Shown piece after piece: positions 46,272-62,555 of a DNA stretch of 64,000 nt. Made by a program: the position numbers and the translations under genes. How positions within the stretch are numbered: the stretch's first letter is position 1; each line of letters begins with the position of its first letter. The notes under the pieces were generated by a model. The model saw only the letters and a program-made list of their open reading frames with translations. It was not told the origin of the DNA and did not search any database. The DNA lies in the NCBI GenBank assembly GCA_964057225.1, contig OZ059898.1, forward strand, positions 15,438,001 to 15,502,000, written 5' to 3'. The stretch comes from Auanema rhodensis (Eukaryota > Animalia > Nematoda).

Positions 46272-49200
46272 ATGATTGAACTAGACGGCTTTTGCGGTGA
46301 TCCTCTATGGGTATGTCAAATTATTAATTTATTTATTGATTATATAATTAAATAAATATTATTTTAGAATGATTTCCAACCTGTTTATAACAAAACTACA
46401 TTACCTTTACCAACAGAATGCTTTTCACACACAGTTCTTATTGGTTCGATTAATAATTCTCTGAATAATCTAAATTTTATCTTAATCTTACAGTTATTCC
46501 ATGCTTATTCTTCTGGCTTCAAGTACCAAAACTTATAATTCAAATTAATAATTCAAGAAAATATGCTTTACCATGGACAACCTTACAAGGATTGAAATGG
46601 GTAAAATCTTTTAAATTAAAAACTTCTTTTCATGCGAATTCAATGCTTTACTTTCCAGCTTGTTTCTACAATCATATTAGTCGATATGAGTTTTCTGTTT
46701 TTTATGGCTTTATGGGATCGTTTTCTTATGGGAAAGATTGTTCCAATAGTTGATTACGTATTTCCTTGTGTTATGGTATTGACAATGGTATAAGATATTT
46801 TAAAATTAATTTGATGAACTTCTATTGTGACTTCAGATGTCCATCATGATTGCTATGAATGAAATTCGACGAGCAGGAATTCGCTCATCTGGAACTCTCT
46901 TCGTAACATGGTTGGCTTTTCTCATCTGTGGAACTCCAGAATTTTTGGTTTGGCTAACTATGGGAACAGATCCTGAAGTAAAGACGATTTCATCTATGAA
47001 TTCATGAATACTAATATTTCAGATTGTACCAAATCTTAGTTTCTTCCGATATGTTGCTTTCCTGGTTTACTATCCAATGTTGTTCATCCAGCTTTGTCTT
47101 CATCTATTCTCAGACCCTCTTACTATATTTGTTGAAGATGATGTTGGTATAACATGTCATTCAAACATTCATATTTGTATTTAGACAAATTGCCCTGAGG
47201 CTACGGCTTCATTCCTTAATCGAACAGTGTTATGGTGGATGAATCCTATTATAGCAAAAGGACGTGTAAAGCCACTTGAGGTAATACCTTCTCACATGTT
47301 TCAATTCTCAAACTCTTTTCTCTAGGTTGAAGATTTATTTGAACTTGATGAAGACATGCATCCAAATCTTCTATCAGAGCAATGGTATCGACAATGGGAT
47401 CATGCTATTAATGGTTAGAACTTTCAATCATCTTATAAATTCTAAAACTTATATTTATTTCAGATTACAATATACGTAAACGAGCTTTCCAGATAACAAA
47501 GAAGAATGTTTCATCTTCTGATTCTCTTCTTGGATCTCAGAATAATCATAAAACCTATGGAACTAGTTCACAACCATCCCGTTCCGGAGGTATATTATAA
47601 GATAATCACTTTATTTGTTTATAATTTATTTTGTTTTTTAAAATATTTTTATTAGAACCAACAAATGAAGAAGTACCATTACCATCAATTATTTGGTCTT
47701 TATGGCCAATGTTTAAATGGCAATTAATTGGATGTACAATTATTAAATTTATGGTTGATCTTCTTCAATATTCAAATCCTGGATTTTTGAAGTACTTTCT
47801 GATTGATCACTTCTGTTTTTTATATCTTATTTCTCATATTACAGTCTTTTAATTCTTTTTACTGAGGATCCTGATTCGCCATGGTATCTTGGTCTTACAT
47901 ATGCTTTACTTCTCTTCATTTCTGCTGAACTTCGTTCATTATTGATGAATTCGTATACGTATCGTAGTGTCCGTGTAGGAAATAAGATTCAGATTGTCTT
48001 AACTACAGCTGTTTATGAGAAAGTATACTCTAAACTTGATCAGTTTCTATATGTAACATCTCTTGATTACTTCAGACTTTACGTTTGTCAAATACTTCAC
48101 GTCGTCAAAAGACCCAAGGAGAAATTGTGAATCTGATGGCTATCGATGTTGAAAGATTCAAAATGATAACACCTCAGCTTCAACAATTCTGGAGTAGTCC
48201 TATGCAGGTTAGTTCATTAGCATAAATTAAAAAATAAACAAATTAGTCAAATTGAACGCCACGTTTTCACGTGATAACGCGCATTTGATAAATTTGCAAC
48301 ATTTTCAACGGTTGTTATCAGTTACTGATAAACTTTTAAAATTTGATAAATTATTTTTTAATCTTTATAACATTATTTTTTATTTTTTTTAGATTATAAT
48401 ATGTATGTTCTTGCTCTATCGTACTATAGGATATGCTGTTTTTGCTGGTTTATTAGTTATGGTTAGTAATAAGTTAAATTATATATTATATATAAATTAT
48501 AATATATATATATATATATAAATATAAATATATTAATCTTTATAATTTAGATTTTAATTATTCCGGCTAATTATAAAGTTTCATCAATCAGTAAACGATG
48601 GACATTAGAGCAAATGCGATTAAAAGATGAGCGTATTCGATTAACAAATGAAATATTAAATGGTGTTAAGGTTAGTTATACTATTATTATAAATAATATA
48701 TTTTAATTAGGTTGTTAAATTATGTGCTTGGGAAGTTGCATTAGAAAATGCTGTAGATGAGATTCGAAACAAAGAGATGAGCTTAATTCGTAAAGCTGCA
48801 ATTGTAAAAACGTTTGCTGACATGTTGAATATTGCTGCACCATTTTTCGTTAGTATTTCATTATTATTATTATTGTTTATTTATTTATTTTTATTTATTA
48901 GGTTGCTCTTGCCAGTTTTGCAGTTTATACTTTATCCAACAGTGAGAATGTTCTAACACCACAGATTGCTTTTGTTTCAATTACTTTATTCAATCAGCTT
49001 CGTGGACCTCTTCTCATGGCTGCTGACTTAATTCAACAAACTATTCAGGTTAAAATTTACTTTTCTTCTTATATTTTTATATATTTCAGTTAATTGTTTC
49101 AAACAAGCGCTTAAAAGAATTTTTAATTGCTCCGGAATTAAGTCGTGATGATATTCATCGTGAACCTAAAGCTGAATGTAAGTTCATAATATGATGATTA

Positions 49201-61200: not shown

Positions 61201-62555
61201 TTTATTCAATATGTTTGACATTTAATGAATTTTTATTTAAGCAACAACTCTTTTGTCTGTTTGGTCCAAGTATAATGGAACGATGACTGCTGGCTTCATC
61301 GGTTTATCAGTATCTTACTCCCTAGACGTAAGTTAACAATGTTTTTAATTATATTAATTATATGTTTAAAAATGAAATGTTAAACTAATTTTTCTTATAG
61401 ATTACATTCCTTCTAAATATTTTCATTCGATTCTTATCTGAAGTTGAAAGTAATATTGTTAGTGTTGAACGTATCAGAGAATATACATTTATGGATACAG
61501 AGGTTTATATTTTAAAATATAGTTTATTTCAAGTTTATATAATTTTTAGGCTGATTGGCAATCACAAAAACTTTTGCCAAGAGGATGGCCAACTAATGGA
61601 AAAATTGAAATCGTCAACTATTCAACCAGATATCGTCCTGGTTTGGATTTAGTATTAAGGGTTAGTTCTAATTTCTTGAGAAATCATATGAAATTTTGAT
61701 TTTAAAGGGATTAAATTTGAATATTGCTCCTGGAGAGAAGGTTGGAGTTGTAGGAAGAACTGGAGCTGGAAAATCTTCATTGGCTTTAGCCCTCTTCCGC
61801 ATAATTGAACCTGCTGGAGGTCAGATCATCATTGACGACGTAGACATCTCCACCATTGGGCTCCATGATCTCAGAGCTAACTTGACCATCATTCCTCAGG
61901 TTTTCCTTGTTTTTCAGTAATTTAGCCTATACGGATGTTAAGGATCCTGTACTCTTCTCTGGAACTCTTCGTTTCAACTTGGATACTCTTGGATATTTCG
62001 ATGATTCTGACCTATGGGCAGCTTTGGAACATTCCAACTTGAAACCTTTTGTTGAGCAATTGCCTATGGGCTTGGATCATAAGATCAATGAAAGTGGTGA
62101 TAACATCAGGTATTTCATGGCTTCTCCAGTTGAAGTTTTCATGAAAATCTCTTTAGTGTTGGTCAAAGACAATTGGTTTGCCTTACAAGAGCTTTACTTC
62201 GAAAATCAAGAATTTTGGTTTTGGATGAAGCTACAGCTGCTGTTGATGTTCACACAGATTCATTGATTCAAGTAATAACTTAACTAGAGTAACCATGCTA
62301 ACTATATGTCTTTTCTAGACAACTATACGTAAAGAATTCACAAATTCTACTGTTATAACCATTGCTCATCGTTTGAATACGATTATGGATTATGATAAGT
62401 AAGATCGTTCCAAGATATTTCCCTTTAAGCCTTTAAATTTCAGAATTTTGGTAATGGATGGTGGTCGAACGGCCGAATATGATTCTCCTCAAAATCTCTT
62501 AGCAAATAAGAAATCTATTTTCTATTCTATGGCACAAACTGCTGGTTTAGTTTGA
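55282..62555 (+). CDS. mrp-3: ABCC/MRP multidrug-resistance transporter with TMD0, tandem copy 2
   Basis: Starts [12 protein letters not shown] and ends AGLV*. Same exon layout as copy 1 plus an extra intron (58997-59043), and one GC-AG intron (59732-59776). NBD motifs are intact. Probable co-ortholog with copy 1. Confidence 0.9.
57733..57787. repeat. Five 11-bp tandem units, consensus TTYACGTGAGY (E-box/HRE array), in an MRP copy 2 intron
   Basis: TTTACGTGAGC TTCACGTGAGT TTTACGTGAGC ATCACGTGAGC TTCACGAGAGT. Confidence 0.9.

What the first reader, a model, noticed from the sequence alone, without database searches (positions are those of the whole stretch)
46272..62555. Domain-restricted concerted evolution of tandem MRP transporters: shared ATPase domains, divergent substrate domains
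Seen: near-identity, introns included, at 49171-49437 vs 58693-58958 and 49568-50133 vs 59136-59701 (NBD1), and at 52287-53210 vs 61619-62542 (NBD2; about six differences by eye in ~925 bp). TMD0, TMD1, the linker and TMD2 differ at many amino acids and their introns mostly cannot be aligned. Protein-level constraint cannot explain identical introns. Inference: an old duplication with recurring gene conversion tolerated only over the ATPase modules, while selection keeps different substrate specificities. Conversion among ABC paralogs is known, but the domain boundaries here are unusually sharp.
Basis: partly seen in the sequence, partly recalled or inferred. Interest (0 to 1): 0.8.

Follow-up and report, generated by a model that had tools for sequence, protein, structure and literature searches.

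The report
Gene conversion between tandem MRP genes
Two old, side-by-side multidrug-resistance-type (ABCC/MRP) transporter genes of a nematode have recently copied their ATP-binding segments onto each other, introns included; this is a clean example of a known process, not a new one.

Summary
Two intact, head-to-tail long-MRP (ABCC) genes lie on the + strand. Copy A is 46272-53223 (40 exons, 1517 aa). Copy B is 55282-62555 (41 exons, 1502 aa).

Outside the tracts they are an old duplicate pair. Synonymous divergence is about 1.1, introns align at about 55%, and protein identity is about 59%.

Four collinear tracts are nearly identical, introns included:
- A48002-48077: 2 differences in 76 bases.
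- A49170-49437: 9 in 268.
- A49568-50133: 4 in 566.
- A52287-53210: 6 in 924.

Synonymous divergence inside the three large tracts is 0.02-0.04. No third copy exists in the genome. Interlocus gene conversion is the only reasonable reading.

The three large tracts map to NBD1 and NBD2. The restriction to domains is only approximate:
- NBD1 keeps a 130-base unconverted hole (pS 0.92) that holds a 47-base intron found only in copy B.
- Tract 2 runs about 30 residues into the linker.
- A short fourth tract sits in TMD1.

Tract 1 is significantly older than tracts 2 and 3, so there were at least two events.

Nothing here shows that selection for different substrates sets the boundaries. Sharp edges are usual for conversion.

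Other notes of this scan report many conversion mosaics elsewhere in this genome.

The parts
46272..53223 (+). Copy A: intact long-MRP/ABCC gene, 40 exons, 1517 aa (TMD0-L0-TMD1-NBD1-linker-TMD2-NBD2). The model was built locally; exons in the linker are the least certain.
   Evidence: Spliced model from paralog- and outgroup-guided dynamic programming plus hand curation, with an open frame and GT-AG introns of mostly 41-58 bases. Pfam ABC_tran and ABC_membrane match single exons. Best solved relatives are ABCC2, ABCC1 and ABCC3, in collinear positions.
55282..62555 (+). Copy B: intact long-MRP/ABCC gene, 41 exons, 1502 aa, 2058 bases downstream of A in the same orientation. One likely GC-AG intron at 59732-59776.
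   Evidence: Overall protein identity to A is 1076/1520.
49170..49437 (+). Tract 1 in A (partner B58692-58958): last 8 bases of exon 17, intron 17, and the first 206 bases of exon 18. This is the N-terminal part of NBD1 through Walker A. 9 differences in 268 make it the oldest large tract.
   Evidence: Exon 18 matches ABC_tran profile positions 2-51 and ABCC2 residues 629-730.
49438..49567 (+). Unconverted hole inside NBD1 (partner B58959-59135): the Q-loop and the start of the helical subdomain, plus most of intron 18. Copy B has an extra 47-base intron here (58997-59043) that A lacks.
   Evidence: pS 0.92 and pN 0.147 over 35 codons. A 47-column gap in the alignment. A exon 18 (311 bases) equals B exons 18 plus 19 (244 + 67), with canonical splice sites.
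49568..50133 (+). Tract 2 in A (partner B59136-59701): starts 21 bases before exon 19 inside intron 18. It runs through exons 19-21 (signature, Walker B, H-loop) with introns 19-21, and ends in exon 22 about 30 residues into the linker. 4 differences in 566.
   Evidence: dS 0.023 and dN 0.
52287..53210 (+). Tract 3 in A (partner B61619-62542): from the middle of exon 35 (YSTRYRPG, start of the NBD2 core) through exons 36-40 and introns 35-39, ending 13 bases before the end of the reading frame. 6 differences in 924, four of them clustered at 52697-52766.
   Evidence: ABC_tran matches exons 36 and 38. Exon 35 aligns to ABCC3 residues 1279-1307. dS 0.025.
48002..48077 (+). Short fourth tract (partner B57474-57549): last 21 bases of exon 11, the whole 53-base intron 11, and 2 bases of exon 12, all in TMD1. 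2 differences in 76. Either a micro-conversion or a conserved intron element.
   Evidence: Found only in these two copies in the genome.
58692..58958 (+). Tract 1 in copy B.
59136..59701 (+). Tract 2 in copy B.
61619..62542 (+). Tract 3 in copy B.

Best explanation
Shown: two tandem, same-strand ABCC/MRP1-like exporter genes arose by an old duplication. Since then, non-allelic (interlocus) gene conversion has overwritten collinear segments of one copy with the other. It did so at least twice, at different times, and carried exons and their short introns together.

Inferred: the surviving tracts sit on the two nucleotide-binding domains for two reasons. These are the most constrained segments, so they keep the homology that recombination needs. 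They are also functionally interchangeable, so homogenising them costs nothing. Conversion stops where it meets diverged sequence or a structural heterology. Such stops are the TMD and linker sequence, the 3' end of the reading frame, and the B-only 47-base intron in the NBD1 hole.

Both genes remain intact and most likely functional. Each has the usual ABCC asymmetry: NBD1 has Asp instead of the catalytic Glu after Walker B, and NBD2 is canonical.
For: - Tracts are 96.6-99.4% identical and flanked by saturated divergence.
- dS is 0.02-0.04 inside the tracts against about 1.1 outside. Introns inside are 372/376 identical against about 55% outside.
- The tracts are collinear, in the same orientation, and about 9.4 kb apart.
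- Only these two copies hold the tracts. The next paralog is 69% identical over NBD2, so there is no third donor and no repeat family.
- Tract 1 is significantly more diverged than tracts 2 and 3, so there was more than one event.
- The tracts still carry 4-9 real differences each, and both reading frames are intact.
- Domain assignment rests on Pfam and solved ABCC structures.
- Outgroup paralogs are detectably similar at the DNA level only in the NBDs. At the protein level they are 60-90% identical in NBD exons against 35-60% in TMD exons. This fits homology-limited conversion.
- Runs that look like RNA hold 0.43-0.44 of the sampled words of A49000-53400. The expectation is 0.466 if all modelled A exons are expressed, and about 0.22 if only the shared tracts were.
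- Recurrent conversion between tandem ABC transporter genes has a published precedent (PMC6053246, citing Lamping et al. 2017).
Against:
- No sister-species sequences were available, so the expected tree conflict (NBDs by species, TMDs by paralog) is untested.
- The unconverted part of NBD1 is only about 70% identical between the copies. That is no better than many TMD exons. Higher baseline homology of NBDs therefore does not by itself explain why only they are converted.
- The direction of copying is unknown.
Confidence: 0.85

Rival explanations
1. Conversion occurs along the whole gene, but natural selection removes converted alleles everywhere except the ATPase modules, because the two transporters must keep different substrate specificities. 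The boundaries are therefore set by selection.
For: - All three large tracts fall in NBD1 or NBD2, which make up about 27% of the gene span.
- The start of tract 1 and the end of tract 2 lie within a few residues of the NBD1 limits used for the MRP1 NBD1 crystal constructs.
- The unconverted part of NBD1 is no more similar than the TMDs. Baseline homology alone therefore does not predict the pattern.
Against: - There is no evidence of adaptive divergence. dN/dS is about 0.26 in the TMD blocks, with dS saturated.
- There are exceptions to the domain rule: the hole in NBD1, the linker overrun, and a tract in TMD1.
- The hole coincides with a 47-base intron heterology, which is a mechanical barrier.
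- Substrates are unknown for either protein.
- Other notes of this scan report many conversion mosaics in unrelated gene pairs of this genome. That points to a general genomic process.
Confidence: 0.3
2. Assembly or polishing artefact. The near-identical tracts were created when reads of one copy were used to correct the other, or by local collapse.
For: No direct read evidence could be obtained. Shares of sampled words in public runs cannot tell the two cases apart, because words of a tract would be present from the other copy anyway.
Against: - The tracts are 76-924 bases long and embedded in unique sequence in a 112-contig, 181 Mb assembly. That is far shorter than the long reads such an assembly implies.
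- Reads do not cross-map between sequences 25-45% diverged, so polishing cannot turn one into the other.
- The tracts keep 2-9 differences each, with two distinct divergence levels.
- The edges fall at biologically sensible places, and both frames and all splice sites stay intact.
- Ten DNA runs from three studies hold 0.56-0.91 of the words of the stretch.
Confidence: 0.04
3. Purifying selection alone keeps the NBD segments alike, with no DNA exchange.
For: NBDs are the most conserved part of ABC proteins.
Against: - Synonymous sites differ at 8 of 299 and introns at 4 of 376 inside the tracts.
- The next paralog is only 69% identical over NBD2.
- The hole within NBD1 has pS 0.92.
Confidence: 0.01

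Closest known systems
Recurrent ectopic gene conversion between the tandem ABC transporter genes ABC11 and ABC1 of Candida krusei / Pichia kudriavzevii (Lamping et al. 2017, as described in PMC6053246)
   Same: Head-to-tail tandem ABC efflux pump genes are homogenised by repeated non-allelic conversion, and both genes stay functional.
   Different: - The yeast pair belongs to the ABCG/PDR family and is homogenised to 98% DNA identity overall, with array contraction and expansion.
- This pair is ABCC, the genes are intron-rich, about 75% of the gene span is anciently diverged, and only the NBD segments are converted.
Mosaic (patchwork) interlocus gene conversion with divergent islands in duplicated genes. 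From my own knowledge, not checked here: human RHD/RHCE, red/green opsins, globins, and the Teshima-Innan models.
   Same: Old duplicates have sharply bounded, near-identical tracts that include non-coding sequence, next to regions that escaped homogenisation. The interplay of homology dependence and selection is the standard explanation.
   Different: Here the converted part is the minority of the gene and coincides with two separate catalytic domains of one protein.
Other conversion mosaics noted in this same genome by this scan (BarH pair s1-421321, FAS pair s1-429806, CAP paralogs s1-429816)
   Same: Same genome and the same kind of patchwork homogenisation of neighbouring paralogs.
   Different: Different gene families. 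Those notes are AI notes and were not re-tested here.
Long MRP-type ABCC exporters (human/bovine ABCC1, ABCC2, ABCC3; yeast Ycf1)
   Same: - Collinear alignment of exons to ABCC2 residues 629-730 and ABCC3 residues 1279-1307.
- A protein of about 1500 aa with an N-terminal extension.
- A degenerate NBD1 site, a canonical NBD2, and a C-terminal ...FYSMAQTA(K/G)LV like MRP1.
   Different: Substrates and physiology are unknown for both copies. The linker is short and poorly conserved.

Membership tests
ABCC / long MRP transporters | Two ABC_tran nucleotide-binding domains with Walker A, signature, Walker B and H-loop | tested here: met
   PF00005 matches exon 18 (NBD1, E 2e-8) and exons 36 and 38 (NBD2, E 1.5e-12 and 5.6e-6). 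The motifs can be read in the translations.
ABCC / long MRP transporters | Two type-IV ABC_membrane transmembrane domains | tested here: inconclusive
   PF00664 matches exon 27 in TMD2 (E 2e-8). Single TMD1 exons were too short to reach significance. TMD1 is inferred from collinearity with ABCC2 numbering.
ABCC / long MRP transporters | Closest relatives are ABCC members, with NBD1 at about residue 640 of about 1500, which implies a TMD0-L0 extension | tested here: met
   Top solved matches are ABCC2, ABCC1 and ABCC3. A residues 637-739 align to ABCC2 residues 629-730. Exon 35 aligns to ABCC3 residues 1279-1307.
ABCC / long MRP transporters | Asymmetric ATP sites: NBD1 lacks the catalytic Glu after Walker B | tested here: met
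   NBD1 reads [12 protein letters not shown] and NBD2 reads [12 protein letters not shown] in both copies. The interpretation rests on established knowledge of ABCC1.
Interlocus (non-allelic) gene conversion | Collinear tracts of near identity embedded in much older divergence | tested here: met
Interlocus (non-allelic) gene conversion | Identity extends to silent sites and non-coding sequence | tested here: met
   dS is 0.02-0.04 inside against 1.1 outside. Introns inside the tracts are 372/376 identical.
Interlocus (non-allelic) gene conversion | No third donor or repeat family explains the shared sequence | tested here: met
   Own-genome DNA and protein searches find only the two copies.
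Interlocus (non-allelic) gene conversion | Tree conflict between converted and unconverted segments across species | not testable with these tools
   No sister-species sequence could be fetched. An exon-level word search returned only distant fragments.
Interlocus (non-allelic) gene conversion | Reads confirm both tract/flank junctions in both copies | not tested

The most novel reading that the evidence does not exclude
The pattern may be a natural domain-swap map of an ABCC pump. Under this reading, the two paralogs share one ATPase engine through recurrent conversion. Conversion is excluded not only from the TMDs but also from the one patch of NBD1 that touches them. That patch is residues 705-739: the Q-loop and the start of the helical subdomain, including the position equivalent to CFTR F508 / MRP1 F728. 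It would have to stay co-adapted to each copy's diverged coupling helices. The hole would then mark compatibility determinants at the NBD-TMD interface, rather than being a by-product of the B-only intron.
Probability: 0.1. Interest if true: 0.55.

Novelty: new member of a known kind. Interest (0 to 1): 0.3.

Why it matters
- It is a tidy, well-bounded case of partial concerted evolution in a drug and xenobiotic efflux family. NBD-based trees of ABCC genes in this nematode lineage would wrongly date the duplication as recent, while TMD-based trees would date it as old. Annotators and phylogeneticists should treat the domains separately.
- The mosaic offers a ready-made hypothesis about which segments of an MRP are interchangeable between paralogs (most of NBD1 and all of NBD2) and which are not.
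- It does not reveal a new mechanism. This scan has noted many similar mosaics in the same genome.

Tried and rejected
- **Read laying.** No read or contig evidence on junctions, depth or splice sites was obtained. After that I sent no reference covering 48472-48510 to any database, genome, pattern, paper or findings search. One caveat: the whole-window ARAGORN annotation did run over those places. The places lie in intron 13 of copy A and play no part in the finding.
- **Exon-level word search.** Searching the 104-aa open frame across the tract 1/hole junction returned only four distant fragments and no close relatives. The length filter hides full-length ABCC proteins, so no sister-species comparison was possible.
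- **Big representative search.** Not used. It clusters at 50% identity, so it would merge A, B and their orthologs into one protein and could not answer the paralog/ortholog question. The operators also asked to spare it.
- **GENECONV proper.** Not run, because with two sequences it has no informative sites. I used a two-state HMM, binomial and Fisher tests and Nei-Gojobori estimates instead.
- **First automatic gene model.** It read through introns inside the identical tracts. It was corrected using the C5 paralog as comparator and by hand. The exon 17/18 junction of copy A has two possible donor/acceptor pairs, and the linker exons 22-24 remain provisional.
- **Literature.** Searches for conversion confined to the NBDs of ABC paralogs found no direct precedent. 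They found only the whole-gene yeast case. Lamping et al. 2017 itself is not held.
- **Third tandem copy or repeat family.** Rejected.
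Full report
**What is there**

The window is AT-rich (about 32% GC). It belongs to a 181 Mb, 112-contig assembly. Earlier notes of this scan treat that genome as a nematode close to Pristionchus; I did not test this.

BLAST and MAFFT comparisons show two collinear, same-strand genes about 9.4 kb apart. I built the spliced models locally. A dynamic-programming exon chainer was scored on conservation against the other copy and against a more distant paralog on contig C5. 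I then curated the result by hand.
- Copy A is 46272-53223, with 40 exons and 1517 aa.
- Copy B is 55282-62555, with 41 exons and 1502 aa.

Both have open frames and canonical splice sites. B has one likely GC-AG intron at 59732-59776. Introns are mostly 41-58 bases. The A exon 17/18 junction and the linker exons 22-24 are provisional.

Exon-by-exon searches give these matches:
- Pfam ABC_tran for exons 18, 36 and 38, and ABC_membrane for exon 27.
- ABCC2, ABCC1 and ABCC3 as the best solved relatives. A residues 637-739 align to ABCC2 629-730, and exon 35 aligns to ABCC3 1279-1307.

The translations show the usual ABCC asymmetry: IYLLDDP in NBD1 and ILVLDEATA in NBD2. These are long MRP-type exporters.

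**The observation**

The first pair needs a 1-base gap, which gives A49170-49437 vs B58692-58958 with 9 differences in 268. A two-state HMM recovers exactly these three segments. It also finds a fourth, A48002-48077 / B57474-57549, with 2 differences in 76.

Outside the tracts:
- Exons are 54-86% identical at the DNA level.
- Introns align at chance level.
- Protein identity is about 59%, calculated.

Nei-Gojobori estimates:

| Segment | dS (or pS) | dN (or pN) |
|---|---|---|
| TMD0-L0-TMD1 | 1.15 | 0.30 |
| Linker-TMD2 | 1.10 | 0.29 |
| Tract 1 | 0.041 | 0.012 |
| Tract 2 | 0.023 | 0 |
| Tract 3 | 0.025 | 0.004 |
| 35 codons between tracts 1 and 2 | pS 0.92 | pN 0.147 |

The eight introns wholly inside tracts are 372/376 identical. 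Binomial probabilities against the most conserved background window are 1e-11 to 1e-64. Protein-level constraint cannot produce this.

**What it is**

The tracts are collinear, include non-coding sequence, and sit in anciently diverged genes. Own-genome searches find no third copy; the next paralog is 69% identical over NBD2. This is interlocus gene conversion between tandem paralogs.

Tract 1 (3.4% diverged) is significantly older than tracts 2 and 3 (0.7% each; Fisher p about 3e-4; tracts 2 and 3 do not differ, p = 1). So there were at least two episodes. Four of the six differences in tract 3 cluster at 52697-52766. This suggests either patchy repair or two abutting tracts.

**Where the edges are**

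- Tract 1 begins 8 bases before the end of exon 17 and covers intron 17 and the first two thirds of exon 18. This is the NBD1 N-terminus through Walker A.
- Tract 2 begins 21 bases before exon 19, inside intron 18. It covers the signature, Walker B and H-loop exons and ends in exon 22 at about residue 872, some 30 residues into the linker.
- Taken together, tracts 1 and 2 span A residues about 633-872. By the offsets this corresponds to roughly MRP1 636-875. The NBD1 crystal constructs listed begin at the same point.
- Tract 3 runs from residue 1283 (YSTRYRPG) to 13 bases before the end of the reading frame. Beyond that the 3' flanks are unrelated.

There are three exceptions to a clean domain rule:
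1. The 130-base hole in NBD1 (A49438-49567).
2. The overrun into the linker.
3. The 76-base tract around intron 11 in TMD1.

The hole contains a structural difference. B has a 47-base intron (58997-59043) splitting what is a single 311-base exon in A. Such a heterology is a plausible mechanical barrier to conversion.

**Why the NBDs**

Two non-exclusive explanations fit.

The first is that homology limits conversion. NBDs are the only parts of these genes still detectably similar at the DNA level to other paralogs. Their protein identity to the C5 paralog is 60-90%, against 35-60% for the TMDs. They therefore stay convertible longest. Once converted, they stay convertible.

In its favour, the unconverted piece of NBD1 is only about 70% identical, no better than many TMD exons. 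Against it:
- TMD dN/dS of about 0.26 shows only purifying selection.
- The substrates are unknown.
- The hole coincides with the intron heterology.
- Similar mosaics are noted in many unrelated gene pairs of this genome.

I take conversion as established (0.85). I leave the cause of the restriction open and lean to homology plus constraint.

**Artefact?**

I could not lay reads.

Indirect arguments against an artefact:
- The tracts are far shorter than long reads and are embedded in unique sequence.
- Polishing cannot cross-map reads between sequences 25-45% diverged.
- The tracts keep fixed differences at two distinct levels.
- All frames and splice sites remain intact.

Public runs from four studies hold the stretch, but this does not tell a real tract from a false one.

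Four small runs that look like RNA hold 0.43-0.44 of the sampled words. The expectation is 0.466 if every modelled A exon in 49000-53400 is transcribed, and about 0.22 if only the shared tracts were. This is indirect support that copy A is expressed and spliced roughly as modelled.

**Comparison with what is known**

Recurrent ectopic conversion between tandem ABC transporter genes is documented for ABC11-ABC1 of Candida krusei. There it homogenises the genes to 98% DNA identity overall (PMC6053246, citing Lamping et al. 2017).

Mosaic conversion with divergent islands is textbook for duplicated genes; this statement rests on my own knowledge and was not checked here.

I found no paper describing NBD-confined conversion in ABCC paralogs. 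The absence is weak evidence, given the limits of the library.

**Verdict**

This is a real and clean example, but of a known kind. It is useful as a caution for ABC phylogenies and as a natural hint about which modules are interchangeable. Interest is 0.3.

They were never sent to a search tool.

Noticed in passing
window 50678-50752 (- strand): A tRNA-Lys (TTT) gene lies antisense inside the 247-base intron 25 of copy A. The matching intron of copy B is 47 bases and has no tRNA. ARAGORN and Rfam agree (69.7 bits).
   Followed up: partly
window 53410-53481 and 53576-53647 (- strand): Two tRNA-Gly (TCC) genes with equal Rfam scores, 166 bases apart, sit in the 2-kb spacer between copy A and copy B.
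   Followed up: partly
window 58997-59043 (copy B) vs 49470/49471 (copy A): An intron presence/absence difference between the paralogs. B has a 47-base GT-AG intron that splits the exon which is continuous in A. The C5 paralog seems to have an intron about 80 bases further upstream instead (offset shift).
   Followed up: partly
window 59732-59776: A likely GC-AG intron in copy B (donor AG|GCAAGT, 45 bases). It is the only way found to keep the frame through the linker exons. It needs RNA evidence.
   Followed up: no
window 49160-49231: Copy A has two usable donor sites for intron 17 (49160 and 49178) and two acceptors (49205 and 49232) that both keep the frame. In copy B the upstream donor is mutated (GT to GA), and a 1-base deletion rules out the first acceptor. 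Alternative splicing of A is possible here.
   Followed up: no
window 34000-46000: Strongly negative GC skew, with several CT/TC microsatellites (36885-36948, 38031-38078, 40954-41045, 43565-43678, 45093-45167) upstream of copy A.
   Followed up: no
window 48462-48550 / 57978-58062 (intron 13): Intron 13 is 73% alignable between the copies, more than other non-tract introns, and it gives inverted self-matches in BLAST.
   Followed up: no
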